Assembly (NCBI RefSeq): GCF_001194135.2
Contig: NC_068983.1
Span: 142,902,264-142,966,263 of the forward strand
Source: Octopus bimaculoides
Lineage: Eukaryota
Reading direction: 5' to 3'
Length of the DNA: 64,000 nt
The notes below the pieces were generated by a model that did no database searches, was not told where the DNA came from, and was given only the letters and a program-made list of their open reading frames with translations. Made by a program: the position numbers and the translations under genes. Shown here in pieces: positions 13,922 through 54,154 of the stretch (positions are counted from its first letter, which is position 1; the number at the start of each line of letters is the position of its first letter).

Positions 13922-14054
13922 CAACTTATTTAGGTTGTTTTCGCAAGAATAAAGATAATACTTTTTTGGTCATAAAGTATTTCAGTGCAATGACACTAGA
14001 ATGGTGTCTCAACAGATGCAGAGAATCTGGAATCCAATACTGTGCCATCCAGGG
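13922..14054 (+). CDS. Internal exon encoding the N-terminal half of a WSC domain (gene A)
   Basis: TTTCTTTCAG acceptor, GG|GTAAGT donor, phase 1 to 2. Translation xTYLGCFRKNKDNTFLVIKYFSAMTLEWCLNRCRESGIQYCAIQG matches the WSC pattern YLGCF...MT.E.C...C...G..Y...Q. Confidence 0.85.
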
Positions 14055-15928
14055 GTAAGTACAACTTTGTATGTTTTTGTTTGTATTTTCATTTTTTTTT
14101 TTATCAAGATTTACAAACAATCATAAACGATCTTTTGATATTGTTTAAAGACTGGGTGAAAGAACATTTAAACACAATGTGTAATGATGATTTCAGGTTA
14201 ATTAATAGTGATTTAATTATTATCTGAATTAACTAATTTCTATGATTTGATGTTTTACTAATTTGTAACAGGTTCAGCCAATGTTTTCTTATTTATACCA
14301 ACTTGATTCCAATTTATACATTTTGGTATTTACTTCTGTTCACTATATTGTTTCTATGAATGAAAAGATTCCATATTAATCCATAATTTCAAATGTTTAT
14401 ATCTATATTGAATCGTATGCTCATATAATATTCTGATAGACATTTTCAGGGTAGAATAAGAATTATTCATGTATGAATATGAAGGCATATATTCATAAAT
14501 ACCATATCATATTTGCAACAGCTTATCTACAGCATCTTTCTTTGAAGTTACCATTAAAAAATAAAAGGTTGTATATATTTACATCCATATAGCATATACC
14601 TACCCTTCTTTCTCTCCATATAAAATTTCCAGCTGTAACAAATTATTAACTTTACAAAGACTGATTTTATACCCCCAAAACCAGTCAACAAAGTTTTTTC
14701 TTATTCCACCACAACTGTATTCTAGTTCTTGGCAAAATGAATTTTTTGACCCATTCTATCTCTTTCCTTCACTCCTCAACGATATCCAACCAACAAACTT
14801 ACTGCTTCTTTCAAACAATCTGGAAACTGTCTTCTCTAAGAAACATATTCTCACTTCATTTTGTCTTTTATCCTATTTTTGGATGGTACAACAAACTAAA
14901 AGTAATTGAGGGCTAATGAAAAAAGAAAAGAAAATGAAAAAGAAAAAAATTTTCCCTCTTAAGTTTTCTACTTATAACATATATTCTGATCTATTTCATT
15001 CTTTCTTATTAAGATATACAAATCTGATAGAATCCTAGCAAAAATCTTACTTAATCAGCATACTTCAGTGATAGCTCATGACATTTCCAAATAAATATGA
15101 AACATACCTCCTGTTCCTTACAAATCTAACCCCCACCCCACAAAAATAAATTGGGAGAAAATAACTTTCCCTAATTGACTTAATACTATTCATGTTCTTC
15201 TCCATATTGACTGTATTTGCTGTTAATTTTTGTTGAGGATTGAAATTACAGTATTTGATCCAGTTAATTCTATTCACAAATCTGTTCACAAATCATAGTT
15301 TGTCTTCTAATTGAGTATACCTTTGATCAAAGGTATAACAATTGTGACCTTTCAGTTTTTTTAGGCATTGTATATATTGGGCTACATCATGTAATATGTC
15401 CTTCCTTTTTTTAAGATAGTGAGGTTTGAAGGAAGTTAAGCTGTTATTTCTAACAGGTTGAGCAAACATATAAGGACTCTTGCACTGGCTCAAGTTTACA
15501 TCCTTTTTATTTTTAGTTCAAATTCCACCCATATCCACTTTAATCCTTCCTAGGTCTTATATAATAAGTATTGATATAATAAACTTTACCCTAGAAAGCA
15601 GTACCTCAGCAAAGTCACAACCCAACTACTGAAACCAATGTAAGAAAAAGATAGAAAAATGACATGAGGTGTAACAATAAGGTGTACATGTTTAATTCCA
15701 GCTTTATTTTCTCAAATCTTGGCTTTTGAAGAGCCAACTCTTTTATGTTTACTTTTTTTTTCTTTCTGACTAATGTTAATATTTAATTTGAGGAAAGTAG
15801 GTGGAGTGGTAGAAATTGAGCAGCAGACTAAACAGCCCTTCTTCCTTGGCTTCGTTCAGTGTAGGAGAACTTTCGTCTCCAAGTTTGTACACAGTCAATT
15901 TCTTCCAGAGAGAGAAAGAGAGAGAATA

Positions 15929-16075
15929 AACCCTCAGTACTTGACTGGTACTTCGTTATTGATCTCATAAAGATGAAAGGCAGAGTTGAATTTAGCAGGA
16001 TCTAAACTCAGAGTGTGGAGAGCCAGAGTGAATGTTACAAAGTATTCTATCTGATACTCCAACAACTCTGCCTAC
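15929..16075 (-). mobile_element. tRNA-derived SINE (CORE-like), degenerate
   Basis: Reverse complement resembles CTGAGTT.A.AT.C.GC..A..TC.ACT.TGCCTTTCATC..AAGTACCAGT of the copy at 16639. Confidence 0.6.
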
Positions 16076-16269
16076 TTGCCACTTACATATATATTACAAT
16101 ATTTAATTTTGATATTAAGAATTCCAAATTTAAACAGCATTGGTGTTATCTTCACTTTCATTCCTCTAGTTATATGCTGGATTTGATTATACTCCTTCTA
16201 CCCCAAATGTGTGGTCTTGTGTCAATGTAAGAAATTATTTGATTTGAGATCTACTTCTTCTTCAGTTTA

Positions 16270-16308
<39 letters not shown>

Positions 16309-16638
16309 GACAGTAACCAGATTTATATTTTACCAATTTATATAATATTGAAAGCTTACTTTACCATATACTCCTTGTAGTGAAAGTTAAATTTCAAACA
16401 AATGTTCTTGAAAACTGTAGCTTCTAACATTATAAAAATGGTGACTAAAAAACAGTATGAAAGATATCAGTACAAGCAATATAAGTACTCTGTTTATTGA
16501 AAGTGTTTTCTAAGCAGGTTTTACATTGGGTTTTCTATAGATTAAAGGTTCCATTATATAATTTTATTGCATAAATGCTACTGAAAAGCAAAAAATTTCA
16601 TGCTTAAAAGTTCTCGTATTATACTGTTTTATTACATA

Positions 16639-16812
16639 AGGTAGTGTGCTGGTAGAATCATTAGTGCATCAGATGAAATGCCTAGTGATATTTCTTTTGA
16701 CTCATTATGTTCTGAGTTCAAATCCCACTAAGGTTATATTTTCCTTTCATCCTCCCAGGTGTGATAAAATAAAGTGCCAGTCAAATACTGGGATGAGATA
16801 GATTGCTGACCA
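16639..16812 (+). mobile_element. tRNA-derived SINE (CORE-like)
   Basis: A-box-like TGGTAGAATC, B-box-like GAGTTCAAATCC, then CCTTTCATCC..GATAAAATAAAGTGCCAGT. Confidence 0.75.
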
Positions 16813-16829
16813 CAACATTCAAAATTTTT

Positions 16830-17004
16830 TTCTCCATGTTTTTCTCGTTGTGTTTCTCCTTATTCTTTCTGTTGAAGAGCGTAGCTCGAAACGTTAAAGA
16901 CTTTCTCTATTACCGAGTGTTAAACTAATACATCCTTTTGTTGCTTACACCACCTGTCCTCGTCTGTTGTTTTTTTCGTAAATTCTCCCATATATATATA
17001 TATA
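16830..17004 (+). mobile_element. Small repeat with minimal hammerhead-like motif, ending in (AT)n
   Basis: TCTTT-CTGTTGA-A-GAGC-GTA-GCTC-GAAA-C-GTT-AAAGA at 16864-16900; homologous copy at 50340-50441. Confidence 0.6.
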
Positions 17005-17229
17005 NNNNNNNNNNNNNNNNNNNNNNNNNNNNNNNNNNNNNNNNNNNNNNNNNNNNNNNNNNNNNNNNNNNNNNNNNNNNNNNNNNNNNNNNNNNNNNNN
17101 NNNNNNNNNNNNNNNNNNNNNNNNNNNNNNNNNNNNNNNNNNNNNNNNNNNNNNNNNNNNNNNNNNNNNNNNNNNNNNNNNNNNNNNNNNNNNNNTATAT
17201 ATATATATATATGAATATATATGATGACT

Positions 17230-18130
17230 GTCTACTTGTGCCTGAGGGAGAACCAACAACAACTATCAAAATAATAATTCTTTCAAGAGACTCTTTAAAC
17301 TTGCTTAACTCTTACATATCTTTTCACAGACCTTGCAAACAAACCTGCAACATATACATGCTTAAGTATATTCCAGTGTATAACACTGTGTCTTTTTAAG
17401 CCCTCAATAGATTTGCAAACTTTTCCATATGTACTGCATGTTGTGCAATGTTTTGTTGTGATCATGTAGTAGATATATGTATAGAGTAGATATCATGCAG
17501 GAACATACAGCCAACTTTTTGCCTCACCTGATGACTTTGTTGGCATCTAGTAAGTCTGGCCTTGGGAAAGTGCTTGGAACCACAAATATTGCATACCACA
17601 CTTACTCCATCAATTTCACACATTTATGTAACTTGTTTTTATGTAACTTGCTTGGATTCTGCATGAGATATGCATGCTTTTTCGAAAATATCCTTTATCA
17701 CTCTTCTCCTAAAGTGATGATTGAAAGCATTTCTTTCACAGCTGGCCTCACTTATTTCAAATGTTTTCAAAGAAACTATTACACAGTTCTTAAATTGCAA
17801 CTTTGCTTTATGTTGTAATTTTTACATAACTAGTTCACCATACAATGTCTACTTTTGAGATCCTCTAATAAGTTGTCCAGTCTGAAGTAAACAGTGCTTG
17901 TGTACCATTGTCTTAATACCCCAGACTTTGGATCCCCTCAAAACCTCTGTATTTGTAGTCAAAATGTTTTAAACATCTCTGATGGCATTAAAGGGTGTTT
18001 AACGATGTTTGTACAAGCCCTATGTTTCACATGAGTAAATAATGGAATAATTAAATAATTCATGATGAACTGGGAGCATGAGTGGGATCCATTCCTGTAG
18101 GAAATTTTCAAACAAAGTGACATCTTTGTT
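17230..18130 (-). mobile_element. Decayed RTE (BovB-like) LINE 3' region with three C2H2-like zinc fingers
   Basis: YSCET..LYKH..HQRC..TNTEVL..TLYGEL, then VCNICGSKHFPKARLTRCQQSH, CSTYGKVCKSIEGLKRHSVIH and VCKVCEKICKS*ASLKS. Confidence 0.75.
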
Positions 18131-18139
18131 CCTTCTCTC

Positions 18140-18840
18140 TCTGTTCATTGTATATTGCTATCACTTTCACAAATGCTTTTGCTGTTGATTGCTCTTTTGA
18201 GATAAATGTGAGAAACTGATCTTCTGGTTGTCTCTTCAATTTGTAGCATTTTGGTGCCAGGGTGGAAGTCTTTCAATTCTTTATTTGTGATTTCTTTTAT
18301 GCCAATGACTTGATGGTAGGAATAAATTCCAAAGTGTGATATAACAAATGAAGGCAATGAGTTGCTCCCTAGATAATGCAGTAGCACCAATATGGTCATC
18401 GATGTAGTAACTTTGATACTTAAGACCTGGGCCACAATATTACCCACAAAAGAGGTTGGTAGAGCTGGGGCTTATCTTAGTATCCAGGGTTAAGTGAGTC
18501 GTAGAAGTAAAAAATGTTTAAGGACTAAGAGCCTATTGTTGTGGGAGGAGTGATAGTGTGTAAGGATTTCACATCCATGGGGAATAGTTGTGAGGATCCA
18601 GAAGGTAGGGAAAAGGAGTTTAGAAGGTTAAAGGTACAGTTAATATTCTGATATGCAAAAGTTGAGCTGCAACAAAGATGATATGAATTTATCAAGGTAG
18701 TTAGAGAGCTGTTCAGTAAGACAACTATAAACAGAAGCAACGGAGTGATCAGAATGCATAGATTTGTGCAGCTTAAGAAGAAAATAGATTGTAGAGGTAT
18801 GAAGTTACTTCATACAGAAGTTTGTTGCAGTGCAAGGGAT
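18140..18840 (-). mobile_element. Penelope-like element reverse transcriptase relic
   Basis: LKLHKS..SC.TEQLSNYLD, LFPMDVKSLHTITPP (PLE motif MDVxSLYTxIP) and GTKM. Confidence 0.7.
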
Positions 18841-19261
18841 TGTAGATGAAGAGATTAGTGTTTTAATGGTTTGAGATTACAGTTTTTGGTTCTAGATTGT
18901 ATGATCTTTGGGTAAATTCTGATTAAAACAAAAATGAAAAACTCACAGGCATTAATGAAAATCTTTTGTTCTTCTAATCTATCTTGATTCCTTCCCTTAC
19001 TTTTTATCTCGCTCCTGACATATAATAACAGCTATTAATGATCCTCCACCTCTCTTCACTGTATACATTACTTTATATATATGTGTATTTGTGTTTTTTT
19101 ATGTTTGTATGTCATTATGTACATGTGGGCATATATATATGTTTGCATATTATTTATGTGTGTGTTGTGTGTGTGTTTGTGTGTACTTATATAGACAAGT
19201 TTGTATACATATGTCTGGCTAGACATATATATGTAGTGTATACAACTATATGTATATATAT

Positions 19262-19465
19262 TGGTTTCAAATTTTGGTACAAGGCCAGCAACTTTCAGAG
19301 AAGGGGTAAGTCAATTACATTACCCCAATACTCAACTAGTGCTTATTTTATTGACTCTGAAAGGATGAAAGATAAAGTTGACCTCAGCGGAATTTGAATT
19401 TGCAGCATAAAGACAGATAAAATGCCGCCAAGCATTTTGTCTTGGTGTGTTAATAATCCTGCCAG
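19262..19465 (-). mobile_element. tRNA-derived SINE (CORE-like)
   Basis: Reverse complement contains CAAATTCCGCTGAGGTCAACTTTATCTTTCATCCTTTCAGAGTCAATAAAATAAGCACTAGT. Confidence 0.75.
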
Positions 19466-19480
19466 TGCACAACCTTTACA

Positions 19481-19513
<33 letters not shown>

Positions 19514-19521
19514 GTATATAA

Positions 19522-19681
19522 TGCCAACTACTCTCTCAGAGTGGTTGGCATTAGGAAGGGCATCCAGCTGTAGAAACTATGCCAAATCAGATAGGAGTCT
19601 GGTGCAGCCTCTCAACTTGCCAGCCCTCTCAAACCATCCAAACCATGCCAGCATGGACAACGGGCGTTTAATGATGATGAT
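19522..19681 (+). mobile_element. RTE-type 3' tail fragment
   Basis: GAGTGGTTGGCATTAGGAAGGGCATCCAGCTGTAGAAAC...(GAT)n. Confidence 0.85.
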
Positions 19682-19727
19682 ATAGCTTTAGTTAAGCTAT
19701 ACACAAAAAATTAATGGAGACCCAGAA

Positions 19728-20723
19728 TGTGTTAGTGAAAGATTTATTTTGTTGAGCACATGAGGGTGATAGCTGCTTCTCAACTCCTGCTTCATAGAAG
19801 CTCACTTAATCGGAAGTCAACTTCGCTGCAGACCAGCTCCCTAGCTAGCCTGCAGTGAAGTTCCTGTCTACAGTTTATCTGTTATAAATCCTTGAGCAGT
19901 GTCCGACATATAACTCTCTCCCCACCGAACTGTTGACTGTCATTGGAACTAGGAAGACGTTTTAACTGTCCTGTCTATGCTTGTGATTACTTGGCTCTTT
20001 GGTGACTATTCCTTGGCAAGGGTTGATGTGATTTGCTTGGGGCAGCTCCTGTTTGGTGACCATGCTGACTTCTGTTCCTGTCTCGATTAGGAACCTACAT
20101 TCAGAGCTCCGATTGCAGACATAGAGGAGCAGCTGATTGTGTTTTCCTGCCACCAGGGTATTCAATGGCGATTGGTCCTGGAGTTTCCCTGGGCTGATTG
20201 CCAAGATTTCCTGAAGCTACATGGTTGTCTGCACTTCATATCCTTTTTTTCTGGACTTTGTGTGGTAAAAGCACAGGTTGTCTTACTTAACTCTACCATG
20301 TCTTGGGGCTGGCCCTAAGGCATTAACCATAAAACCACTTGATAAAAAATCTTTGTCAGCTGCTTTTGCTAACTGCCACAGGCCCTTGATCTCGGTCTGA
20401 GTTATGAGGGCCTGGACCTGGGGCAGTAACTTGCAGAGGAATATTTCCCTAAACAAAATGAAGGGGACTCATCTGGGGGAACTAATGCCAACATCTTGTC
20501 TATCAACTCCAATGGCTTGGAATTGCCTAATTCTTCCTGCTGTATCTTGGCTGTCACTTCCCAGTCAATCTGCCAGAATGTATCCACCAGCCTGTCTTTT
20601 AACGTGGTGTATTTGCGTGTTGCTGGGGGTTGGGTTAAAATGTCCAGCACTCTCATTGCTGTGTCCTCATTTAGTGCCGCTATGTACGAATATTTCTTTA
20701 GGTTTGAAGTTATTTTGCATACA
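19728..20723 (-). mobile_element. Gypsy-type LTR retrotransposon relic (gag, protease, PPT, putative 3' LTR)
   Basis: gag-like KYSYIAALNEDTAMRVLDILTQPP..KYTTLKDRL..LGNSKPLELIDKML; protease-like LLYVCNRSSECRFLIETGTEVSM; purine tract at 19926-19914 followed by TG at 19908, AATAAA near 19745 and a CA end near 19728. Confidence 0.75.
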
Positions 20724-20778
20724 TATTTCATGTTATTTGCACTGCTGGTGACATCCTGTACCCATTTATGCATGTATG

Positions 20779-20861
<83 letters not shown>

Positions 20862-21540
20862 TATATCATTTATTATTATTTAATTGGACATGACGCATTC
20901 ATTTCCATGTAAATTTATCTTTACCTTTTGATGCGACTCTCTACTCTCTACTGTTTTCTTCTCCCATCCTTCTCTAATTCCCTTTTTCTCCCCTCCTTCC
21001 TTCACCGTTTTTTATCTGTCTTTCTCTCTCTCTCCATCTCTTTTTCTTTTTCTCTCTCATTGCTTACACGTGACCATCGTCCATCTTTTTTTCCTCATGT
21101 GACCATCTTTCTTTACCTGCACAGATGTTTAAAGGAACAGACGTGTTTTCTCTCTCTCTCTTCTATCTTTTCTCTTTTCAAAAAAAAATGTTTCTCCCAG
21201 CATTCACTATTTTTCTCTCGTTCTGGTCTAATGACCCTCTATGTTTGTTTTCGTTCGGTTTCCTTGTATGTCTCCACTGTCATTTTTTTTGTTCCCAACT
21301 TTGACCCTCCATAAATCCTGAATATTATTTTAGAATTTATGGGAGCAACTGTCTTTGAAGACACATATTGTTGTTGAATGCTTGAAATGAGTAGATAGAC
21401 AGCTGACAACTGATGAAGGGTCTTTTCTCTGTGTTGTCCTTTCTCCTTGTTCATGTAATTCACTTGTTTTTCCCTCATTTGTTTATGTATTTCATGTTAT
21501 TTGCACTGCTGGTGACATCCTGTACCATATATGCATGTAT
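20724..21540. mobile_element. Unclassified element bounded by ~54-bp direct repeats, with internal (TA)n and CT-rich body
   Basis: TATTTCATGTTATTTGCACTGCTGGTGACATCCTGTACC is identical at 20724-20762 and 21488-21526. Confidence 0.65.
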
Positions 21541-21732
21541 CATCATCATCATCATCATCATCATCGATTAACGTCCGCTTTCCATGCTAGCATGGGTTGG
21601 ACGATTTGACTGAGGACTGGTGCAACTGGATGGCTACACCAGGCTCCAATCTAATTTGGCAGAGTTTCTACAGCTGGATGCCCTTCCTAACGCCAACCAC
21701 TCAGAGAGTGTAGTGGGTGCTTTTACGTGTCG
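21540..21732 (-). mobile_element. RTE-type 3' tail with (CAT)n
   Basis: Near-identical to 39896-40085. Confidence 0.9.
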
Positions 21733-21921
21733 TCCCCTTCATTATCTTTTCCTCTCAGTGTTTTTCAAATCTGCTAGCATTGTCTTGGTTTTGACCATTG
21801 CACCCCCAATAAAAACACTTGTTACCTTTCTCTCCTCTTCATTCTGCATTGCTAAAAGTATTCCTTACTCTCCTTAATCATAATGTTTATCTTGCAATAC
21901 CAATGCACATTTCATCTCTCT

Positions 21922-21950
21922 CTGATGAAGAGCCTGTCTGAAACTTTAAA
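21922..21950 (+). ncRNA. Degenerate minimal hammerhead-like motif
   Basis: CTGATGA-AGA-GCCTG-TCT-GAAA-C; stems I and III are not recoverable. Confidence 0.3.
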
Positions 21951-22692
21951 CTTCTTCCTTATGGTATAACTTTAATTCCACTGTTTGAACTCTTTGTACA
22001 ACCATATTACACTGCTTACAATATGAATTGATTTACAATTAAATAATTGTTATGTCTGACTCAGTTTTCTTTATTTCAATTAACATAGACATCTTGCATT
22101 TTGTTGATTTCCATCAAGAGAATAGAATTTGATAAGAATTCTAGAGTAGATTAGTGCAAAAAAACTTTTTTCTTTGTTTTTCTAACACAAGACTGCTGTT
22201 TACTGATTGAGAGTTTTGTATAGATTAAATGTTATATTCAGAGTGTTATGTACAGTTTTATTAGTTTGTAACTATATAGTGTTATAGCTATAAAACCAGC
22301 TTGAATTCTTTTGAGTTTCTTGATAAATAGAATATTCTTTAGATTCTATTTTGAGAAGAGCACTGATAAAAAATACAAAACACTTTTCTAGTTAAATGAA
22401 TATCATTGGTTTGACTTGGCTCTGCCAAATATCAAGCTGAATGCCAACCAGATACAATAGAAGATTAAATTACAAGGGAGCCAAGTTGCTTTTACTTTCT
22501 TTCTTTCTTACCCCTTTAACATCACAATATAAGTTCAGGCTGACAGTATCAAATCAGAAATACCAACATATGTTATTATGTATGATGTCTTAAACATAGT
22601 TGTGAGATTTATAACTGAATTCTTACTGAGTGGAGAAATTCTACAAACAAAAAACAAGAAAATAGAAATATAAAAGAAAGAGAGAAAGTATC

Positions 22693-22757
22693 CCACCACC
22701 ACCACCACCACCACCACCACCACCACCGCCACCGCCGCCGCCGCCGCCGACGACGAC
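22693..22757. repeat. Compound trinucleotide repeat (CAC)n(CGC)n(GAC)n
   Basis: Direct reading. Confidence 0.95.
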
Positions 22758-22967
22758 CGGCTATAAAACAGAAAATTTGGTGACCATCTTCTAAGGATGA
22801 GAATAAAATATGAAGAAATAGTATCAATTTCTATTTATGGCTGAAAATAGGTAATTAGGTTATTTAGAAAATGGCAAACCTTCCACCTTAAGAAAATATT
22901 GTGGCAATAAAAGAAATCTTTTCGGGAAAATTATTATTATTTAATGATTCTCTTTTTTTCTACTTAG

Positions 22968-23134
22968 GTTATATAAATATCAGACATTTTCTTTCAAAGT
23001 TAGGTTTTTGTTTTCATCTGTGCCTGGCTTTAAATATAATTATGATGGTGTTGATAGATTTTTAGCCTGTTCTTCAGTATTTTTGTAAAGGCAATGCAAT
23101 GCTATCCTGTGAAGTTGAAAAGATTGAAATTGTG
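22968..23134 (+). CDS. Candidate exon pair 22968-22998 and 23078-23134 with a 79-nt intron
   Basis: Strong acceptor CTCTTTTTTTCTACTTAG, donor AAA|GTTAGG, acceptor TCTTCAG, donor GTG|GTGAGT. One open reading is LYKYQTFSFK + YFCKGNAMLSCEVEKIEIV, starting in phase 2 (compatible with 14054). No homology recognised. Confidence 0.2.
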
Positions 23135-23829
23135 GTGAGTTGTTTTGAAATTTATCAATAAAATTTTTTGAATTTACTAGTCAGGAAGGGTACTTTATCA
23201 AGTTGAGAGTATGCTTTCTTTTATTTCTATTGATTATATTGTTCCAAAAGACTAAAAGCCTTTCTAAAAAATATTCATAACCTTCAATTTAAGTAGGGGA
23301 AAAATTAAATGAGATATTTTTTTTTATTATTTAACTATCACAGCTGAGTTGCATGTTGGACTAGTAGCTTATGAGCTAGCAGTTTATATCTCAACAGTAC
23401 TGCACTATACCTTTCTAATCAAAACATCCAACATTCAGTGGGATAATTCATTTAATCATAATAAGTACTATGAAAAGGACAGTTACAAGTGTAAGTAGTA
23501 ATAGAAACAATTAATTGACAAGTGCCTCAAATGAACTCAGATCGTCTCATAGCTACGTGTTAGAGATACAATGGCTTCATCAAACTGACTTGCTCTAATC
23601 ACACTGCATAATGACCAAAGCCTAAAGTGTCTCAATTATTCAAATAGTTACATAACATTCATTTTATTACAGATATTTTAGTTCTAGCATTCACTGCAAT
23701 TTGTTCTGCTAACATAGTCTTCAAGCTAAATTCGACAATTTGCAAATAAGGAAAATAAAACACAATATCTCATCTAAAAGTGAAAGCATTTTAAAAAAAT
23801 CAAAAAATATCAACTAGATTATGTCTGGG

Positions 23830-24976
23830 AGATAGCAGTTTCCTCAAAGTAGTGATCCTCAGGTTCCACCACAGCCTCAAGACAGCTCTGGAACCTGGTG
23901 CATGTGTTCCATACTATGTCCCTGGGAAGATCTTCAACACCTCTATGGCCTTAATATTGCAGTATTGTATGCAGAGCAGTTGGTGTCTTTCTCAACTGTA
24001 GCCCCAATACATAATAATCCATGGGATTACAATTAAGGGAATTTGGAGGCTGAAAATTGGGGCTGGTAAAGTTGTGGAAATTCTCTGACAAACACAACTG
24101 ACACTTTCTGGAGGTATTTGCAAAGAGCCAAAACCTGCTGCCATACATATGGCCTTCCAGCAGCAACCCTCTCCAGCCAGAGTTTGACCACAGTCTCTAG
24201 CAGATTCACAGAACTGTCTGAATTGAGCCTAAGGCCCTATTGAAAGATGTGAGGCGGCATGACTTCATAAAGACTGGAGACACATGGAAAGACCATCACA
24301 GTTTGGGGGAACTTGCTTTTCATGATATGTGAGACATCATGTGAATTGTAGATAAGTCACCTGTTATTCTGGGTGTTGTGCAACTGACCTTGGCAGAAGT
24401 TATTTTCATCTGAGAAGAACCAGATCATCCTAGGCTCAACAGGATGCCTCAGCTTGTTTAGGAGCTTCTTTGCTTTCATCAATCAGTTCTCCTTGGCCTT
24501 GGCTGTCAGAATTTATCCCTTGTATGAGTGGTAGTGAGGGTCCTCATCCAGGGCCAGCTTCATGGTGGCAACTCCAATACCCATCTCTCTCACCAAAGCC
24601 TAGATTCCCTTACTTGGATCTTTCATGACCTTGTCCTGCAGTTGTTGAATGAATTCAGGCGTGCGTATGCAATCAGAACATCTGTTGTGTTCCTTCCTGT
24701 TGGCCAGGCTTTGTAGTCTCCATTGCAGTTGTACATGTCATGTCTTACAGCATTTACAGTGTTCTCTGAGCATTGAGCAACAGTTATGATGTTGACATTT
24801 TAATATCCAGCACAAATCTTCATGATACAGGTAATTATTTTCTAATATTCAGATTACTTCCAGCCTTCCATGTCAGCTAACTTTTTCTCAACTACAACTT
24901 TAGTCTTTATGCTCTTTAACACCTTTTCTGAATATAGGAGACATAAAGAATTGACAAATTTAGCCTGAACACCCTG
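23830..24976 (-). mobile_element. Decayed DD37D (maT-type) Tc1/mariner transposon
   Basis: TA-CAGGGTGTTCAGGCTAAATTT end at 24978-24956; PQTVMVF..VSS..VMPPHIF, GRPYVWQQ, SENFHNFTSPNFQPPNSLNCNPMDYYV. Other TIR not found. Confidence 0.85.
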
Positions 24977-26679
24977 TATTTTATCCAAATCTTTTTATAG
25001 TTTTTGTTGATTCTTGACATCTCAATTCATAGTTTATTCAGATTCTATTTTTTAACTGACAAAAAAAACTTTTTTTGTATAGTTGGTATAGATAGACATA
25101 AACTTTTAGTATAATTCACTTGAGAATTAGCAATCATAGGAGAAAATGAAATTTTCATTGGTTTAAAGAGGATTTTTCTTTCTGGGTTTGGATATTTTCT
25201 GCTCAAATTGTACTATTATAGTATATGCTAACAGAGATCTCTTTAATACATAATCTGTCTATTAAGTTTAATCTATCTCAATGTTTAATAATGTTTCCTA
25301 TATTCTTTCTTCTGTCACACACATCTTTACTCTTCCTGTCATCCTTATTTGTTTCACCTCCCCAGACCCTGTACTAAACACTCTTCTCAATACTTCTTCT
25401 CTAGACCCTTGGAAAGTGTTCTCCACCAATGTTTTTTCCTATAGACATTGACCAATGAATGTTCAAGTTGAACATCAACTGCACCAATTTCACCAGTCTG
25501 GAAGAACTTGCAAAGATCATGATTACTGTTGCACTAATTTCATCCAGTTATTGTTATGCTTTTGCACTGCACCCCTTTCTCTGACCCTCCACATACACAC
25601 AGAAAAACACAAGCACATTATTTAGTGTACAACTTAAAAGCAAAAAGTAGTTTATTGTTTGATTAAGCACAAAAGCTTGCACTGTCAGACTTAGAAATTA
25701 AATTTAAAACATTTCTCTTTATTGTGTCTGGATATTAATTTGTTAACTTGCTTTTAATATCTTGTGTAATGAAACAATACCATGACACCACCTTTAGATT
25801 AGTAAGCAGCTGAAGCTTTCAACCATAAATGTTTTCATCATTATCATCATCACTACAATGATAAATACGTACTTACTAGAAAACCTTCTGTAATATCATA
25901 AACTTGTTTACCACAAAAGTTTTTGTTAATATTTCTCATTGAGTGCATATACTTGGAAGTGAATTGTGATTTATTATCTCTTACTACAAGACAATTATTT
26001 GTTAATTTGTTAACATAAACTACTTCCCTTGTGTAATATTTTCTAGGAAATTTGAATTGTAAGAGATTCTTGAAGCAGATTGAAGATAAAATCTTTTCAA
26101 AAACATTTGCATTTATATACTTTCATTTCAGTCTCAGTTCAGTTCAATTATATCTAGGTTATATCACCAAAACCTTTAAGTTATCTTATTTTCCTACATC
26201 TTCATCTCTCTTGTTTTTTAAAATTTTATCGACTTCCTTTTCATCTGGGCAAGTAACATAAATGACACTTAAAGCAATTGTGTGGGTGTAAGCAATAAAT
26301 AATTATCATTTCATCTAAGAAATTACTCAGATATAGGGTGAGAGTTTACAATTCTTATCTAAATGTGATGAGAGAATTGCAAAAACTAAATCTAACCAGA
26401 TGTAGTTATTATTAGAATAAATCAGATATAACAGAATTGTGTAACATGAAACGGAAATCTTTAAAGCACTAACTCTTTTTGCTTTTTGTTTCCATTTTGT
26501 CGGTGATTGAATTTTTTGAACTGTCATCTAAATTTTTAAATAAGACTTGATATTTTTTTTGAAATGTTTCTTTTTTTATTTATTGGCCATATCCATAGAT
26601 AGTGCATATAGATCACAATGGTGGAGATAAATGATGTTTTGTTTGCTCTTATTGGGCATACCTTTAACACAGAGACTGT

Positions 26680-42691: not shown

Positions 42692-43134
42692 ATATTCTTA
42701 AGTCCATCAGTTCGTCAATCACAGTAGCTTCCAAGTTTCACCACTAATTCAGTTCTCAACCTAAATTACAAAAAAAGAGGACATCTCCTCAGCTACACTT
42801 TGGCATAAATAGTTTGAGATTTGGTTCAGTAGTAAAAAAGTTACATCAAAATATCTGTGACCTCAAGGGGGGCAGTAAGGCACTTATTCATCTTCAATTA
42901 ACATAAATTTTATTTTAAAATAAAAGTATACTTTTCTTAGGTTTAAATAATAGAAAAATGCATGAGGAATTCAGAACTGTTAGTTGCATTGAACAAAAAT
43001 TAGTAGAAAAAAAGTTATGAGGTGAAATGTAATGAAATTTATTGTCAGTAAGTGAGGAAGTAAGAAGTAATGCCCCAAGCTATAATGTTAAGATAAGAAT
43101 ATATTGCTAAAATGAATATTTACATCATAATGTG

Positions 43135-43237
43135 GTGAGTTGGCAGAAACATTAGCGCACTGGGTGAAATGCTTGGAGTTATATTGTCTGTCTTTTCGTT
43201 CTGAGTTCAAATTCCATCAAGGTTGACTTTACCTTTC
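43135..43237 (+). mobile_element. tRNA-derived SINE (CORE-like) 5' fragment
   Basis: TTGGCAGAAACATTAGC..CTGAGTTCAAATTCC..GACTTTACCTTTCAT. Confidence 0.7.
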
Positions 43238-45599
43238 ATTTATTTTATTTTTTAATTAAGTATTTAATAAAGTTATTTTTAATATGTTGTTGAATTAGGG
43301 TAAGTTTAACTTTTATTATTAATTTTCTCTTTCATCTTTATTTAACTTGCTTTCTGCTTTTCTTGCTTAAGTGCTTTCCTTTTCTTTTTAGTTAATTATT
43401 TAATCAGGCCAGTTCATTAATGTGTTATATGCTTCAGATATGTGCATCTAAATTTATTGAGGCAGGAATATAGTCATTTTTGGCTGTGTCTCTAGGGGCA
43501 GATCTGAAGGCATGTAGTAAGGCTGTCCAGAAAAGGCATTGGTTAAAAGTGCTAATATTCTAAATTTACTTTTTAAATTTCAAAATGAATTAAAAGGGAT
43601 TTTTCATATATCAAATTTATATTAATGGGACATAGGTAATTTTGACTTGTGTCTATCTGATATGCTTTTATAATTACTTCTGTATTGAATAATTATTGAT
43701 AGATCTAGATTAGCAGCAGTCAGTGCTATTATACCAAGCTCAAAATCTAGGTTACTTAAGGTGAGACTGGTAACTGATGGTTTTGGGATCTTGTTGTTCG
43801 TAACTTTTGGTTAACCATGGTACAACCAACAACATGGTAAAAATCTCTGCCATTAATTTGGTGTGGATGGGTAATATCAAATAATTCAATCACAGCATAT
43901 ATTTAAATTAAACATGGAAAAATTGAAATATTATCATCACTTACATCGAAAAATTGAAATATTATCTTTCAGTATTTTATAAGTTAAAATCTTAAATTAT
44001 TAATTGACACATTATTAATTATCTTATAACAGCAATGCCTGGAAAAAATCATGGATTATATGGAAAAATGCGAGCATGAAAAGTAATATTCTTAAGATTA
44101 TAAACCTGGAAAAGTACAGGACAAGTTATTACACCTGGAAAAGTATAGGACAAATTATTACTTCTAGTAAAGTAAAGAATAAGAAACATCCAGCTGTAGA
44201 AACTCTGCCAGATCATATTGGAGCCTTTATAACATCATTAAGATGTAATGCAATATTGTGGTATCCATCATTTAGAATATCTACTGTTAACTAAAGTTGA
44301 TACCTTCCTCAAATAACAATAGATGAAAGCTCTAACAATTTGTAGGAATAATAAACAATTTTCTTTTTTCACTTTTCTGATATTTTCAAACCATGAATTC
44401 TTAAAATTTTACTCCAGTTAATCAAATTCATAATAAAAACAAGAGAAGCTAGTATACTAATTTCATCCAGTACTCTTATCCCTCAAAACTAATATATCTT
44501 CTTTAACTCTTTTCTGGCACAGCACCTTGAAGCAATTATTTAAAACTGAACTTTTAATATCTATTTAAGTAAAGAAACACTTTTTTATCTTTTTGATTAG
44601 GAGACAATGTTTTGCTACTGCTGAAAGCCCTAAACATCATAAAAAACTTAGTTCTCATTGTGATCAGAGATGTCCTGGAAATGAAATGCAGTATTGTGGC
44701 TCTCAGCCTTCAGATTCTCTTACCTTTTTACAAGTTTATTGTGAGTAACTTGGATACCTCCTAAATATTTCCCTGAAATCTTTTATCTTTTTAATGTTTC
44801 TAATCTACATATGTTTGTTGTTACTTAGCCCTAAACCAGCCATTACTGAGCAAATTTATAATCAAAGGTATCTGTGACAATTGCACCTTTTTAGTTTTGA
44901 CAAGGATAGTGTACCCTAGACTACATTATTCAATACAGAGTATAAGTTGGAGGGAAATTTGGCTGCAGTTTCTACCAAGTTGAGTGACCATGCTAAGGAT
45001 CCCTTATTGGTTTGTTTTAATAGTTATTTTGAAATAATATATCATCTTGTTTTTTTAATGTTTTATTATGAGAGAAAATGATTGAGGATCTAGTCTTTCT
45101 CATTTACAAAATGAGACCCCCCCCCCCCCCNNNNNNNNNNACGATTAACCAATTACAAAAAATCTCATAAATTAAAGAATCTGATGTTATTTGGAATTAA
45201 AGTTGGGAAATTTGGGTAATTTTAGCCAATCAATAGACAGTGTGGCATTAGCAAATTGTTACGATGACAATCCCATGCTGTGTTGTGGTTCACTTTTGTC
45301 TGTGCCGCTGTTGTCTATGTTGATTTCTCACCCTTGATTCTTCGCACCATGACATTCTTTTCACCCATGTGTTTTGTTTTAATCTTTCTGTGTGTTAGTA
45401 TATTACATATTTTTCTGTGCTTTTGTGTGTTAGTATTCTTACATATTTTTCATTTCATATATTTTTGGGACTCATTGATTCAGCTGGATTTATGATTTCA
45501 CTAGGTTAATTCTATTCATAAAAATTTTAATTAGGAGTATTTCTTAAACTGTTAGCTTCACATTTCAACAGCTTAACTGAAATTTAGCCCATGTAACAG

Positions 45600-47448: not shown

Positions 47449-50339
47449 ATCACAATTATTTTACCTCTCTTCATGGGTATCTAGTACTTTTACTATTTGA
47501 TATATTTACTTTCAAACAACTGGCTATTTATATAACTTATTTCTAAACTGTCATCCACCCATTAAAACATCCCATCACCTGCAAAACTTTTATCCTGCTT
47601 TATCTTTAGTAATATAAGTGTTTCCAATAGCTGCTGGCAGTAACACTCTGATTGATTCATTTCAAATGTAAATAATTAATGGGAGAATTGCAAAGAATAA
47701 TGATGAGAACATATAATATTAGAAAGAATAATTTTTTTTTTTTTATAATTCAAGCAATTTCAATGGTGTTGATAATGTGGTTAATGTTGATGGTAGTTGA
47801 AGCCTGTATTTGCTGACAGATACTTTTATACCAATGAAAGATTTCTCTATTCATAGAATAGACCGTTTGAACAGTGTATTGTGCACTAGAGGTTATAAAT
47901 CTAGTATCATTGAAAATTCTGGCTGATTAAGATTAGGGGAAAACATGAGAATAATGTTTATTAAATGTATATAAATCTAAGGTAAAATACAGTTTTGTAG
48001 ACTAAGAAGGTTTAAAAACGAACAAAAGTTTTAAAAATATTATTTACTAAACTGAACATAGTATTATTGACATATTATGAGAATGAATTTGGGAAATTAA
48101 GGAAGCAAGTATAATTAATATGTAGATAGAACAAAGGAAACTAACAATTTAGTTAAGGCTAATGAGCTGATACTAATAGAGACAGTTAAATTCATATACT
48201 GCTCAATAGCATGGATATCAAGCATAATGGAATAGCTGGTTAGATGATAAAGTTACTGGATTTACTATTCTTATTTGGTTAGTTTACAATCAATTTTTAA
48301 GAAAATAATGTATTTACAAGGACAAAAAGCTGAAAACAAAATGTCTGAAACAAAAATTATTGATTTAACTAATTTTTACTCACATATAAGAAATATATTA
48401 AAATCAAATTTGAATGTTAATCATTAATTATATGTAACAAATTCCTATTTAGTAAACAGTATTTGTTTAGTAAATATGGGAATTCATCTGTGAAGCAAGT
48501 TAGTAAAATTCATCTTTTCATAAAATACAGACAGCCAGATAGTGAAAAATTAAGATATATTAGAGTTAAGGTATGAGATGCATCTCTTAGATAATATTTC
48601 ATTGTCTATTGCTAGTAAATTACTCAGAAAGTTCTGGTACTTATTCATCAGGAAAATTGTTAACCTTATCTTTAGAAAATGTTATTACTCTTTAGAAATT
48701 AGGATTTCTAAATGAAATCTAATCTGTTACTTTGTACACACCTAGGAATAAAAACAAAACCACCATCAAAACATAGTATAGATGTAGATACTGCCAAAAA
48801 AATTATTCATCTTTAAAAATGAGGTTAATAGTTCAAAAACTTATAAAGTTACTAACAGTTCATTTCACACATTTAGACATTAAATTTAGTAGGTTTTGTA
48901 AATCTAGACATTAAATCTAGTAGGTGATGTATGTAAAAAATTTCTTATGGCATTGAAATTTGTCCCTTAGAAAAAGACATTTAATTTGTCTTATCCAGAG
49001 ACACTATGAAATATATGTTGTGACAGAACAAGTGACCCATACAAGGACTAATAGTTTAATAGCTTTTCTACCTCACTTTTCCCTTTCCAATAAATGTCAC
49101 ATAATATTTCTTATGTATCTAACTTTTTTATCTCATAATGATGTTCATTAAAAAAAATTTTAATAATGCTAAGTGGGTGAAATAAAATTTGGATAAAACT
49201 GAAAATTGTCATGTTGTTATCAACATTATTATATGAATAAGAGAATAATTTAAGACCCCTAATTTTTCATAAACATCATGTAAGCAAATCAAATTAAATT
49301 TGTTTTTGTTTTTCTGGTAGATAGATATTGTAAATAGTTTACAATAAATAAATGAATAAAGCTTAATTGTAAGATAATTATAGTTTAATATGATATAGTA
49401 ATATAGTTAGCTCATTGCTTTCTTCTGTAAAAGATGGGGGAACATATGTTAAATGATGATGATTAAATATCAGCTTTGGCTTGCCTCATATATACTATGG
49501 AAAGACAGAAAGAATTTAAAAAATTCAAATTTAGTTGTTGGAAACAACACCTAAGCTATTTAAGATATTGTTTGGAATGTGACAGAAGGGTTTCCAAGAT
49601 CCTGTTTTTATGATGAAGCAATGTTAATAATAAATAAATTCAAGTGTGGAAATAAGTAGCCTTAAAATCACACTATAAAAAATTATTTTTCTAATTTAAT
49701 TATAATAATATATTTTCTTCATTTTTAATTGGAAATAGGGATCAAAACCCCAAATCAGTTTTATTCACCAAATGGTAAGAATTTCTCTAATTTTGTTGTT
49801 TATTATGATTAATTCCTTGTAAGAATGTTTTACTCTATATTCTTGTAAAAGAAACTGTTGCTGTTATTTAACATCAGTGATTTACCAAAATATCCTAATA
49901 TGCTATTGATATACTTGTTTTCTAATACTAACATAGTCTGATTAATGTATCATTTTTGTTGATCCAATTTCCCAACAAGACTAAATGCATATGAATTATC
50001 ATTATTCTAACATCCACTTTTCCATGCTTGCATGGGCCAGATAGTGTTTTACTGTAGCAGATACTCTATGGCCAGAAGCCCTTCTTGTCAACAACCCTCG
50101 CCTGTTTTCAAATAAGAAAATATTTTTCCATGACCAGAAATGTTTCTCACAGAAAACTGGAAAAGAACAACATCACTTGTATGATGATGATGCTCATTTA
50201 CAACCATTGTGTGATGTCTAGGCAAGAGTACACACACGCACACACATACATGATGGGTTTCTTTCAGTTTCCATCTATCAAATCCACTCTTAAGGCTAAC
50301 TCAACATGTTTTTTTCATTCTCTCTCTATTTATTTCCTC

Positions 50340-51487: not shown

Positions 51488-51735
51488 ACTCATCATCATC
51501 ATCGTTTAATGCCTGTTTTCCACGTTGGCATGGGTTGAATGGTTTGACTGAGGACTGGAAAGCCAGCGGTTGCACCAGGCTCCAATTTGATCTGGTGATG
51601 TTTCTACACCTGGATGCCCTTCCTAACGCCAACCACTCCAAGAGTGTAGTGGGTGCTTTTAATGTGTCACTGGCACAAGAGCCAGTCAGGCAGCCCAGGC
51701 ATCGATCACGTTTGGATAGTGCTTTTTACGTGCCA
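51488..51735 (-). mobile_element. RTE-type 3' tail with part of the hairpin array
   Basis: (CAT)n, CTGGATGCCCTTCCTAACGCCAACCAC, GTGTAGTGGGTGCTTTT. Confidence 0.85.
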
Positions 51736-52039
51736 TTCCGCACAATAAACCATAGCATGCTGGAGTGCATACTATGGTTGTCAAGGAACTTATAGATTAT
51801 GTGCTATCATTTGATCACTTACATGCCATAGGTTTTACCAGTTAATTCTATAGTGGGTTGTCTGAAAAATGGCATACCAATACCAGAATATTAGTTGAGT
51901 AACTAATGTTGCAGCCATAGCCATCCAGACAAATCAACACTTCAGACTAAAATGTTGTAGTATTCCAGTACCAAATACTTATATATAAGTCATATATAAA
52001 GAGACAACACAAATCACTAAACAAAAACTCAGAATGGAT

Positions 52040-52660
52040 TACAGTATCAGTATTGTACCCCTAAAACACTTAAGACCAGAAAGAATTATTGCACTCACTA
52101 ATATCTTCTCATCCTTATGCCTTCATTGCCAATTCCTCAGAAAGGCTAATAATCACAGGTTTACAAACAAAACTGAAGCAACATTATACATAACCATCAC
52201 TCTCTGATGTACATTCATAAAAATTGTAGAAAAATTCATTCCTGTTATAAAACTCTTGTATTTCTTGTTTCAATTCAAAATATGATTTCAGAGAACAATA
52301 TCCAACCACTGCACAATTGACAAATCTATACTGAGGATGAATTTATTGACAAAATTCCCCAACATACACTATTCTGACCACCATTAACATTAGCAAAATA
52401 TTTGACTCTATTGTTTGCTATCCACTCATAAACAAAGTCATAAACTATGCATTAAGAAACAACAAATTTTGCCTTGCAAAATATTACTCAAGTTGCCAAG
52501 CCTATGTGGAGTATGACGGTAACAAATCTAAAAGTAATTTCATTATACACCACAAGGCTGTATCTCCTCACTTAATCTCTCTAACTTGGACTTACATCTT
52601 CCCACTACTAACAATTGTACACACAACTTAAATAGATGACCTTAGAATTACCTCCTCTCA
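52040..52660 (+). mobile_element. Decayed I/Jockey-like LINE RT fragment
   Basis: ALTNIF.., TILTTINISKIFDSIV..LINKVIN..LAKYYSSCQAYVEY resembles the RT motif D.SKAFD.V..LI.K. Confidence 0.5.
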
Positions 52661-54012
52661 TAATTTCCTTGTGTGTAGCTACACAATAACTTCAAATATT
52701 TTTCTCTTTCTTACTAGCAACACTAAAGAACATAAAATACAACAATCACTACACTTAACAACATGAACCAATAAGGATATGTGGTCACTTGACTTTCTAG
52801 AAGTAACAGCAAAATCTCCCTCAAAGCACACTGTACTGTATTAAAAATATAATATATTGGACAATGTAGTTTGAGGTATGCTAACATCTGAAAAACAGAT
52901 GAGATGGTCATGGCTAGAATGTCTTTGGAGTCTGCTTGATAAGGGTTAACTCCTTGGTTTTGAAGGCAAACTTGACAAATACCTTAACTTGTTAGGTTTT
53001 TTTTTTAATATTTTGATGTAAAACTTGTGTTTAGATTGCTTTATTTTTTTTTTGTGTGTGCCAGTACTGTTTTGCTTGGTAATGTTTGCATTTATTCAGT
53101 ACGTGTTATTTCAGGTGAAGCATATAAATGGGGAGAAATTATGCAAGAGTGTAGTTTCTCTAGTTCTATTGGAGTCAATTGATGAAAATGTTTGAACAGC
53201 TCTGTGTTAATATAAGAAAGAATCTTTTCAATGATTTGAGTCATCACCTATTGTTAACTACCAGATGCTGCTTGGATTGCTGTTATAAAGGAGACATTAA
53301 AAAAAATTATCAGCGAAAATTAGGTTCAAATTCGCTTTAGTATTTACTTTTATTGAAAGCTTTTCTAAATGCTAACACTTGAATTAAAACTAGGTAATTT
53401 AAAAACCTATTTTATGTTGTAACTGTTCAGAACAAAGAAGTGAAATTAAAACAAAGAATTATAATATAAAAGTTATATATCATATACTTTTATGAGAGAG
53501 AGCGAGTACTTTAGCTTCAAAATCTGCCATTTGAGATATAGTGGTTTTTAATTTGCTATATATTTTAAGGCAACTATGAGCATGCAGAATGGTAGCAAAT
53601 ATCTCACAGTTTGTATTAAGATAGATGTCTTTGTGAAGCAATGTCTATTTCTCACATTAATTCTGAGACGTAATTTGACAGCCAGTAGATTTTTCTTTTC
53701 AGCCTCCTGTCATTTTACTGTGCATAAAATCCATCAAATATCTGGGAAAAAGTGTGAGAAAGCATATTACGGGCTCTGAGTGCAGTTAAAGTATTCTTTT
53801 AATGTTACTCTGGTGAAAGAAATACATTTATTTGTATCTTTAGTTTCAGATGGGTCCAGGTATGGTGCTGAAATGCTTTTGTATAAATTAATTGCCTAAG
53901 CATTTGTATCACAGTAAGAAACCTGTATAACCCACATGAGTATGTAACAAAAGCAAAAGAAAAGTTGTTGATCTTTCATGTTTGTAACTGAAAATCTGTA
54001 CATATTTTCTAG

Positions 54013-54154
54013 GAACCTTTGTTGGCTGCTTTGAGGGAAGAATTGGTGCTCTGCAACAGATGAAAAAAATATTAAAAAGTCGATTTGTCAGTATTGATAT
54101 TTGTCTAAAAGCTTGCTATTTCAGAGGATTTCAGTTTGCTGCTTTGGAAACTGG
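54013..54154 (+). CDS. Gene B exon encoding the N-terminal half of a WSC domain
   Basis: TTTTCTAG acceptor, GG|GTAAGA donor, phase 1 to 2; (G)TFVGCFEGRIGALQQMKKILKSRFVSIDICLKACYFRGFQFAALETG. Confidence 0.85.

What the first reader, a model, noticed from the sequence alone, without database searches (positions are those of the whole stretch)
13922..54154. Two WSC half-domain exons separated by a new promoter and signal peptide: alternative 5' cassettes sharing downstream exons?
Seen: both exons encode only the first three Cys of a WSC domain and have identical phases (1 to 2, ending GG|GTAAG). Between them lie a TATA/Inr promoter and a separate signal-peptide exon. I found no acceptor-flanked CxCG..C..C.G..CGG second-half exon in 14055-27880 or 54155-64000. 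Established: WSC domains have eight Cys and bind carbohydrate. Inference: either (a) alternative promoter cassettes, each supplying a different half-domain spliced to a common exon beyond the window, as in variable/constant gene clusters; (b) tandem paralogs where gene A lost or diverged its 3' part; or (c) I missed the exon.
Basis: partly seen in the sequence, partly recalled or inferred. Interest (0 to 1): 0.7.

Follow-up and report, generated by a model that had tools for sequence, protein, structure and literature searches.

The report
Missed exons of octopus five-WSC gene
The two "half-domain" exons are ordinary internal exons of one already annotated Octopus bimaculoides gene for a secreted protein with five WSC (sugar-binding) domains.

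Summary
Both exons are real. A (13922-14054) and B (54013-54154) each match the first half of Pfam WSC, and both end GG|GTAAG in the same phase.

The headline interpretation is wrong. A WSC second-half exon lies at 44601-44740 (+), between the supposed promoter and B. Its motif is degenerate (CFAT for CxCG, CGS for CGG). A 36-nt linker exon lies at 49739-49774.

Joined A-C-D-B, the four exons translate without a stop, exactly to residues 270-418 of XP_014782949.1 / A0A0L8G9U9. This is Octopus bimaculoides LOC106878286, a "WSC domain-containing protein" of 584 aa with five WSC domains, from a gene spanning 132.6 kb. O. sinensis has a gap-free 584-aa orthologue, 91% identical.

All five assembly gaps in the finding fall in introns. 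The real signal peptide and the other exons lie outside the window.

The TATA motif at 27882 and the signal-peptide-like ORF at 28307-28379 are intronic, and such patterns are common in this AT-rich sequence.

The equal phases reflect an old internal duplication of a split WSC unit. Exon A carries an extra Cys and exon C lacks the usual fifth Cys, so each first half is matched to its own second half.

Verdict: already known, ordinary.

The parts
13922..14054 (+). Exon A, 133 nt. First half of WSC domain 3 of LOC106878286 (protein residues 269/270-313). Includes the non-canonical Cys309 (IQYCAIQ). Starts with 2 bases that complete a codon and ends with GG.
   Evidence: Pfam WSC positions 1-45 of 82, E=2.6e-6; exact match to P0001.
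14055..44600 (+). Intron of 30,546 nt between the two halves of WSC domain 3. Contains assembly gaps 17005-17195 and 40202-40602, TE debris, the TATA motif at 27882 and the signal-peptide-like ORF at 28307.
27882..27889 (+). It is intronic, and there is no evidence that it is used.
   Evidence: 231 TATA-like octamers on the + strand, and this site was not picked by the strict TATA+Inr scan. GC is 0.41-0.42 and CpG o/e 0.5-0.6 here, slightly above the surroundings.
28307..28379 (+). ATG ORF MTELFHHRSLMCVVIVLLCYWRIP(G) with a phase-1 GT. It is not part of the annotated protein.
   Evidence: one of about 40 such ORFs; no Pfam hit; hypothetical isoforms that use it are not in the 15-billion-protein collection.
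44601..44740 (+). Second half of WSC domain 3: (G)RQCFATAESPKHHKKLSSHCDQRCPGNEMQYCGSQPSDSLTFLQVY(W). Acceptor ttgattag|G fits the GG| donor of exon A. Donor TTTATT|gtgagt is phase 1.
   Evidence: (WSC positions 49-81 of 82, E=1.6e-4; A+C 55.3 bits).
49739..49774 (+). Exon D, 36 nt. Inter-domain linker (W)IKTPNQFYSPN(G). Acceptor ggaaatag|GG, donor CAAATG|gtaaga.
54013..54154 (+). Exon B, 142 nt. First half of WSC domain 4 (residues 372/373-419). Its second half (IFCVCGQVYDNL...CGG) is not in the window.
   Evidence: (WSC positions 1-47 of 82, E=8.7e-4).

Best explanation
The 64-kb window lies entirely inside one 132.6-kb Octopus bimaculoides gene, LOC106878286 (XP_014782949.1 / UniProt A0A0L8G9U9, "WSC domain-containing protein"). 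The gene encodes a 584-aa protein with an N-terminal signal-peptide-like segment and five tandem WSC domains.

The window holds four small internal exons separated by introns of 30.5, 5.0 and 4.2 kb:
- A, the first half of WSC3.
- C, the second half of WSC3.
- D, a 12-residue linker.
- B, the first half of WSC4.

Ordinary constitutive splicing A>C>D>B rebuilds WSC3, the linker and the start of WSC4.

WSC3 and WSC4 are cut by a phase-2 intron at the same conserved Gly. The five-domain array arose by old internal duplication of an already split WSC unit (the repeats are now 23-30% identical to repeat 1). That is why A and B look like twin "half-domain" exons with equal phases.

Shown here: the exon coordinates, the splice sites, the exact translation match, the five Pfam WSC domains, the orthologue and the gene span.

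Inferred from established knowledge of WSC domains (yeast Wsc sensors, fungal glucanases and lectins, KREMEN1, polycystin-1): the mature protein is a secreted, multivalent glycan-binding (lectin-like) protein. Its ligand and tissue are unknown.
For: -: an exhaustive HMMER search with the A+C peptide gives P0001 at E=2.3e-75.
- P0001 contains the peptides of A, C and B verbatim, in that order, with WIKTPNQFYSPNG between C and B.
- tblastn places P0001 residues 268-313, 314-359, 361-372 and 372-419 at 13918-14055, 44602-44739, 49741-49776 and 54012 onward. Apart from exon A's alignment, which runs two residues into the intron (95.7% overall), the coding parts are 100% identical.
- the four exons joined (451 nt) translate without a stop to P0001 residues 270-418. 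All four have AG|...|GT, and all gaps are intronic.
- identity and names of P0001 and its O. sinensis cluster mate.
- the gene spans 132,589 nt in GCA_001194135.2, and its product hits only PF01822.
- the O. sinensis orthologue is 584 aa, 91% identical and gap-free, including all junctions and the odd Cys pattern.
- the O. sinensis gene spans 149 kb.
- Pfam WSC 225.8 bits, 5 stretches, no other family.
- A+C gives a full-length WSC (positions 1-81 of 82, 55.3 bits).
- the five repeats align, and the intron falls at the homologous Gly in repeats 3 and 4.
- exon A's extra Cys and exon C's missing Cys5 co-vary across WSC domains.
- the closest solved structure is the WSC domain of KREMEN1.
Against: - No transcript reads could be inspected. 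The mRNA structure rests on computed gene models. The same 584-aa sequence is held under a RefSeq and a UniProt accession, and there is a RefSeq model in a second species.
- The O. bimaculoides model was built on this same assembly, so collinearity of the exons with the scaffold is partly circular. O. sinensis DNA could not be fetched because the gene range is too long.
- The function is inferred from domain family only.
- Signal-peptide status was judged by eye. No predictor was available.
Confidence: 0.93

Rival explanations
1. An internal alternative promoter near 27.9 kb drives a first exon ending at 28379 (MTELFHHRSLMCVVIVLLCYWRIP-G). This exon splices in frame to exon D or B and gives a short secreted isoform with only WSC4-WSC5. 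This is a weakened form of the reader's option (a).
For: - TATAAATA lies at 27882, in a patch slightly richer in GC and CpG (GC 0.41-0.42, CpG o/e 0.5-0.63 against 0.3 or less nearby).
- The ORF at 28307 has a hydrophobic core and a phase-1 GT, which would be in frame with D (G+GG) or B (G+GA).
Against: - TATA-like octamers occur 3.7 times per kb, and hydrophobic ATG ORFs about 40 times, on this strand.
- The supposed 5' UTR of about 400 nt contains an upstream ATG ORF (27922-28002).
- The donor CAG|GTGGTC is mediocre.
- A frame match has a 1 in 3 chance.
- Neither hypothetical isoform exists in the 15-billion-protein collection.
- The cluster of P0001 holds only the two full-length 584-aa proteins.
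Confidence: 0.03
2. Two tandem genes. Gene 1 ends in exon C by reading through the donor into the stop TAA (…LQVYCE*, 44746-44748). Gene 2 starts between 44.7 and 54 kb and contains D and B.
For: An in-frame TAA lies 6 nt past exon C's donor, so an unspliced or intron-retaining transcript would end just after WSC3.
Against: - GTGAGT is a strong donor.
- Exon D has good AG/GT sites and matches the linker exactly.
- Models in two species join C-D-B with 91% identity and no gaps.
- No AATAAA or ATTAAA is found within 420 nt downstream of the stop (first at 45171).
- No start or signal-peptide exon was found for a "gene 2".
- The truncated 361-aa product is not in the collection.
Confidence: 0.02
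3. Scaffolding artefact. The contigs carrying A, C, D and B are misordered, and the true genome has A and B as neighbouring mutually exclusive exons upstream of a single shared second half, C.
For: - Each exon is on a different contig, separated by N runs.
- A and B have lengths not divisible by 3 (133 and 142 nt) and equal phases, as mutually exclusive exons do.
- B+C also scores as a full WSC (54.8 bits).
Against: - The protein contains A, C, D, B and a separate canonical second half for B (IFCVCG...CGG) in one chain.
- O. sinensis, from a separate assembly, gives the same order.
- B+C would have 7 Cys. A+C has 8, with the compensating Cys pair.
Confidence: 0.01

Closest known systems
Octopus bimaculoides LOC106878286 (XP_014782949.1 / UniProt A0A0L8G9U9, WSC domain-containing protein) and O. 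sinensis LOC118762590 (XP_036357263.1)
   Same: It is this gene. The window's four exons translate exactly to residues 270-418.
   Different: Nothing differs. The window holds only 4 of its exons. The signal peptide, WSC1-2, the second half of WSC4 and WSC5 lie outside it.
WSC domain of KREMEN1 (PDB 5FWS, 5FWW, 7BZT, 6SNW)
   Same: Closest solved structure by sequence (E=5e-9 to WSC2 of P0001). Same Cys framework and same YxGCY...C...C...YAG..G..CxCG...C...C.G...CGG layout.
   Different: KREMEN1 has one WSC domain between a kringle and a CUB domain and is a membrane co-receptor. The octopus protein is five WSC domains and nothing else that Pfam recognises.
Multi-WSC proteins of fungi and marine invertebrates
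   Same: Tandem arrays of WSC domains. Examples are P0002 with 22 WSC stretches, fungal WSC proteins P0153-P0156 and a Diadema setosum protein P0158. WSC domains are described as putative carbohydrate-binding modules, and glycerotoxin of the bloodworm carries two of them (PMC5336659).
   Different: Only 23-28% identity. The only relatives above the word-index search's 1e-10 cut-off, other than the O. sinensis cluster mate, are these distant WSC proteins. No other cephalopod was found, so the gene looks lineage-restricted in the data available.
   Same: Only superficially similar: repeated homologous exons with identical donor phase.
   Different: In those clusters each variable exon is a first exon with its own promoter and no acceptor, and all splice to shared constant exons. 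Here A and B have acceptors, sit in the same mRNA, and each has its own partner exon.

Membership tests
WSC domain (Pfam PF01822) | Score at or above the curated gathering threshold (27.8 bits) over the full model | tested here: met
   A+C gives 55.3 bits over positions 1-81 of 82. Whole protein P0001 gives 225.8 bits in five stretches. Exon A alone gives 28.0 bits and exon B alone 19.9 bits, first half only. Exon C alone gives 22.3 bits over positions 49-81.
WSC domain (Pfam PF01822) | Eight conserved Cys (four disulfides) | tested here: met
   By reading the sequences, WSC1, 2, 4 and 5 carry the eight canonical Cys positions (one search lists seven Cys columns invariant in all five repeats). 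WSC3 has eight Cys, but Cys5 is Ala and a new Cys sits at the Ala of the YAG motif. The actual disulfide pairing was not determined.
WSC domain (Pfam PF01822) | Carbohydrate binding | not testable with these tools
   Needs recombinant protein and glycan arrays or pull-downs.
   A and B both have polypyrimidine-AG acceptors and begin mid-codon. In the annotated protein, 269 residues precede A and 372 precede B.
   A and B are in the same protein. A joins C (44601-44740), which lies upstream of B. B joins a different second half (IFCVCG...) outside the window. This rests on gene models, not on reads.
Secreted protein (classical signal peptide) | N-terminal signal peptide with a hydrophobic core and a cleavage site | tested here: inconclusive
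   P0001 starts MTHYQVLLATAVYIQYVLVNS|EKRK, which looks like a signal peptide by eye. No predictor was available. This exon is outside the window.

The most novel reading that the evidence does not exclude
Besides the constitutive five-WSC mRNA, the intronic TATA-containing, slightly CpG-enriched patch at 27.5-28.3 kb could be a genuine internal promoter. Its first exon (28307-28379) would supply a second signal peptide and splice in frame to exon D or B, giving a short two-WSC isoform. That would be a domain-number switch by alternative promoter use. Nothing here supports it beyond motif matches that are common in this sequence, but transcript data were not available to exclude it.
Probability: 0.03. 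Interest if true: 0.3.

Novelty: already known. Interest (0 to 1): 0.08.

Why it matters
It matters mainly as a correction. What looked like an exotic alternative-cassette locus is a normal, already annotated multi-exon gene with very long introns. That is typical of the TE-rich octopus genome: 451 coding bases in 64 kb.

Lessons for the scan:
- Do not stop the search for a partner exon at an assumed promoter.
- Allow for degenerate motifs. Here CFAT stands for CxCG and CGS for CGG.
- Expect 30-kb introns in cephalopods.

One small positive by-product: WSC3 shows a Cys relocation (Cys5 lost, new Cys at the YAG Ala) that recurs in a few unrelated WSC domains and co-varies perfectly in the sample examined. 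This fits a C3-C5 disulfide and is a modest point for people who model WSC folds.

Tried and rejected
- **Word-index searches.** The search for homologous proteins with exon A and with exon B alone reported no candidate. These were false negatives for 44-47-aa queries. The same database holds P0001, which contains both peptides verbatim. I first took this to mean the exons were unannotated. That was wrong.
- **Whole-frame Pfam scan.** I packed ORF pieces for pasting but dropped this once regex found exon C.
- **CTCG at 55627-55638.** I considered it as the start of B's second half. Rejected: no AG acceptor in the right phase, a stop after 20 codons, and a LINE next to it.
- **ENCFKG at 62114-62188 and the piece at 63414-63665.** Weak resemblance only. 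They are not in P0001.
- **C....CGG at 14705-14734 on the minus strand.** Wrong strand, on the same contig as exon A. Chance match.
- **Direct C>B splicing.** It would create T+GA = TGA. This led to the prediction, then the finding, of exon D.
- **Fetching the whole locus.** No DNA was returned for either species because the gene ranges exceed 100 kb. Intron positions of WSC1, 2 and 5, and conservation of the 27.9-kb patch, could therefore not be checked.
- **Rfam and tRNA scans of the window.** Nothing found.
- **Literature.** No paper names this gene. The only paper holding both "WSC domain" and "Octopus" is about the bloodworm's glycerotoxin.
Full report
**What the sequence shows.**
- The window is AT-rich (33.7% GC) and full of microsatellites and transposon debris. 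It has six N runs.
Both have polypyrimidine-AG acceptors and GG|GTAAG donors.
- Read from their third base, they give TYLGCFRKNKDNTFLVIKYFSAMTLEWCLNRCRESGIQYCAIQ(G) and TFVGCFEGRIGALQQMKKILKSRFVSIDICLKACYFRGFQFAALET(G).
- Pfam places them on positions 1-45 and 1-47 of the 82-position WSC model, with E=2.6e-6 and 8.7e-4. Only a few thousand ORF pieces exist in the window, so this is far beyond chance.
- One detail is off. Exon A has four Cys, not three.

**The missed exon.**
- A relaxed Cys-pattern search of all six frames found, on the + strand at 44.6 kb, RQCFATAESPKHHKKLSSHCDQRCPGNEMQYCGSQPSDSLTFLQVY.
- The DNA shows the acceptor tttttgattag|G. This supplies exactly the one base needed after a GG| donor. 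A strong donor follows: TTTATT|GTGAGT.
- Alone, the exon matches WSC positions 49-81 (E=1.6e-4). Joined to exon A it gives a full-length WSC (positions 1-81 of 82, 55.3 bits, E=8e-15).
It searched only 14055-27880 and 54155-64000, having assumed a gene boundary at the "promoter". The motif is also degenerate (CFAT for CxCG, CGS for CGG).

**Identification.**
- An exhaustive HMMER search of 1.84 billion representative proteins with the A+C peptide returned P0001 at E=2.3e-75.
- P0001 is 584 aa and contains the peptides of A, C and B verbatim, in that order. WIKTPNQFYSPNG lies between C and B.
- It is XP_014782949.1 / UniProt A0A0L8G9U9, [quoted passage not shown] of Octopus bimaculoides. Its only cluster mate is XP_036357263.1 of O. 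sinensis, which is 584 aa, 91% identical and gap-free.
- tblastn of P0001 against the window located the linker exon at 49739-49774. It found nothing for residues 1-267 or 420-584 (sequence).
- Joining 13922-14054, 44601-44740, 49739-49774 and 54013-54154 gives 451 nt. These translate without a stop, exactly to residues 270-418.
- The gene spans 132.6 kb in GCA_001194135.2 and 149 kb in O. sinensis. The whole window therefore lies inside the gene.
- Pfam finds five WSC domains and nothing else.
- The true N-terminus, MTHYQVLLATAVYIQYVLVNS..., lies upstream of the window.

**Assembly gaps.**
- All five gaps listed in the finding are intronic. Two lie in the 30,546-nt A-C intron, two in the 4,998-nt C-D intron and one in the 4,238-nt D-B intron.
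- Every residue from 270 to 418 is accounted for by sequenced bases, so no exon of this stretch is hidden in a gap.
- The four exons sit on four different contigs, in mRNA order and on one strand.
- This is partly circular for O. bimaculoides, because the model was built on this assembly. The O. sinensis model gives the same protein order.

**The supposed promoter and signal peptide.**
- TATAAATA at 27882 is real. However, TATA-like octamers occur 231 times on this strand, and a strict TATA+Inr scan did not select this site.
- The region is slightly richer in GC and CpG than its surroundings. I cannot explain that.
It is one of about 40 similar hydrophobic ATG ORFs.
- Its phase-1 GT would be in frame with D or B, which has a one-in-three chance.
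- An upstream ATG ORF precedes it.
- Hypothetical isoforms that use it, and a truncated product ending in exon C, are absent from the 15-billion-protein collection.
- I rate an internal promoter at about 3%.

**Why A and B look like twins.**
- The five WSC repeats align over their whole length at 23-30% identity to repeat 1.
- In repeats 3 and 4 the intron falls at the homologous Gly, in phase 2. This fits an old internal duplication of an already split WSC unit.
- The other three repeats could not be checked, because their DNA is outside the window and could not be fetched.
- The halves are not interchangeable. I extracted 753 WSC domains from the 151 proteins retrieved.
  - Cys3 and Cys5 are both present in 680 and both absent in 47.
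  - A Cys at the Ala of the YAG motif occurs in 6 domains from 6 proteins. All 6 keep Cys3 and lack Cys5.
- WSC3 of the octopus protein is one of these. Exon A carries the new Cys (C309) and exon C has Ala at the Cys5 position. Both species share this.
- So A and C are co-adapted (4+4 Cys). B (3 Cys) goes with its own canonical second half, IFCVCG...CGG (5 Cys).
- That a C3-C5 disulfide is replaced by a C3-C' disulfide is my inference from this covariation. It was not shown structurally.
- The sample is biased, because it consists of the best hits to WSC3 itself.

**Mechanism and function.**
- Shown: ordinary splicing A>C>D>B within a long-intron gene.
- Inferred from the WSC family: a secreted protein with five lectin-like modules, probably binding a glycan multivalently. 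The family includes the yeast Wsc sensors, fungal glucanases, polycystin-1 and KREMEN1. Background is in PMC5336659, and the closest solved structure is the KREMEN1 WSC domain.
- The ligand, tissue and role are unknown. No paper mentions the gene.
- Apart from the O. sinensis orthologue, the nearest relatives found are fungal and echinoderm WSC proteins at 23-28% identity.

**Verdict.** The headline interpretation (alternative 5' cassettes) and the tandem-paralogue alternative are refuted. The locus is already annotated and ordinary.

Noticed in passing
window 13922-14054 and 44601-44740 (P0001 residues 301, 309, 318): WSC3 has a relocated Cys. Cys5 of CxCG is Ala, and a new Cys replaces the Ala of the YAG motif. 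Among 753 WSC domains from 151 proteins, all 6 domains with that new Cys lack Cys5 and keep Cys3. Cys3 and Cys5 are otherwise both present (680) or both lost (47). This suggests a C3-C5 disulfide replaced by C3-C'. The sample is biased towards relatives of WSC3.
   Followed up: partly
window 44741-44748: An in-frame TAA lies 6 nt past exon C's donor (TAT T|GT GAG TAA). Intron retention would give a protein that ends right after WSC3 (…LQVYCE*). The first ATTAAA is 420 nt further on (45171). No such product is in the protein collection.
   Followed up: partly
window 27501-28250: A patch with GC 0.41-0.42 and CpG o/e 0.5-0.63, against GC of about 0.3 and CpG o/e of 0.3 or less around it. It contains the TATAAATA and a short ATG ORF (27922-28002). 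The cause is unknown. It could be TE remnant, unannotated TSS or chance.
   Followed up: partly
window 13778-13859: A (CA)41 microsatellite ends 62 nt upstream of exon A's acceptor. Many (TA)n and (CA)n tracts lie elsewhere, several of them next to assembly gaps.
   Followed up: no
window 10391-10705 (+), and about 11.3-11.7 kb: A piggyBac-type transposase fragment (Pfam DDE_Tnp_1_7, E=6.8e-15). A Cys-rich tail (CIVCKAKGKCKKTRDHCSQCDMPLC) appears in the + strand ORF pieces. It is interrupted by stops, so it is probably a dead copy in the intron upstream of exon A.
   Followed up: partly
window 55804-56682 (+); 20405-20869 (-); 1253-1670, 3866-4261 and 40604-40921: Retroelement debris in the introns:
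- a weak, below-threshold match to LINE endonuclease (Exo_endo_phos_2, E=0.0045, 17.3 bits against a 27.4-bit cut-off) followed by a 132-aa ORF;
- a DUF7041 ORF on the minus strand (E=4.5e-7);
- three copies (81-91% identical) of a retroelement-like tail with no Pfam match.
   Followed up: partly
window 3417-3499, 21542-21731, 39895-40083, 51480-51667, and inverted copies at 2146-2378 and 19524-19609: A dispersed repeat of about 190 nt, possibly a SINE, with 81-100% identity between copies (…GGATGCCCTTCCTAACGCCAACCACTC…). At least six copies lie in the window, all intronic. ARAGORN finds no intact tRNA.
   Followed up: no
tool behaviour: The word-index protein search returned "no candidate" for the 44-aa and 47-aa exon peptides, although the database contains a protein (P0001) that includes both verbatim. 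Short-query negatives from that tool should not be read as absence.
   Followed up: yes
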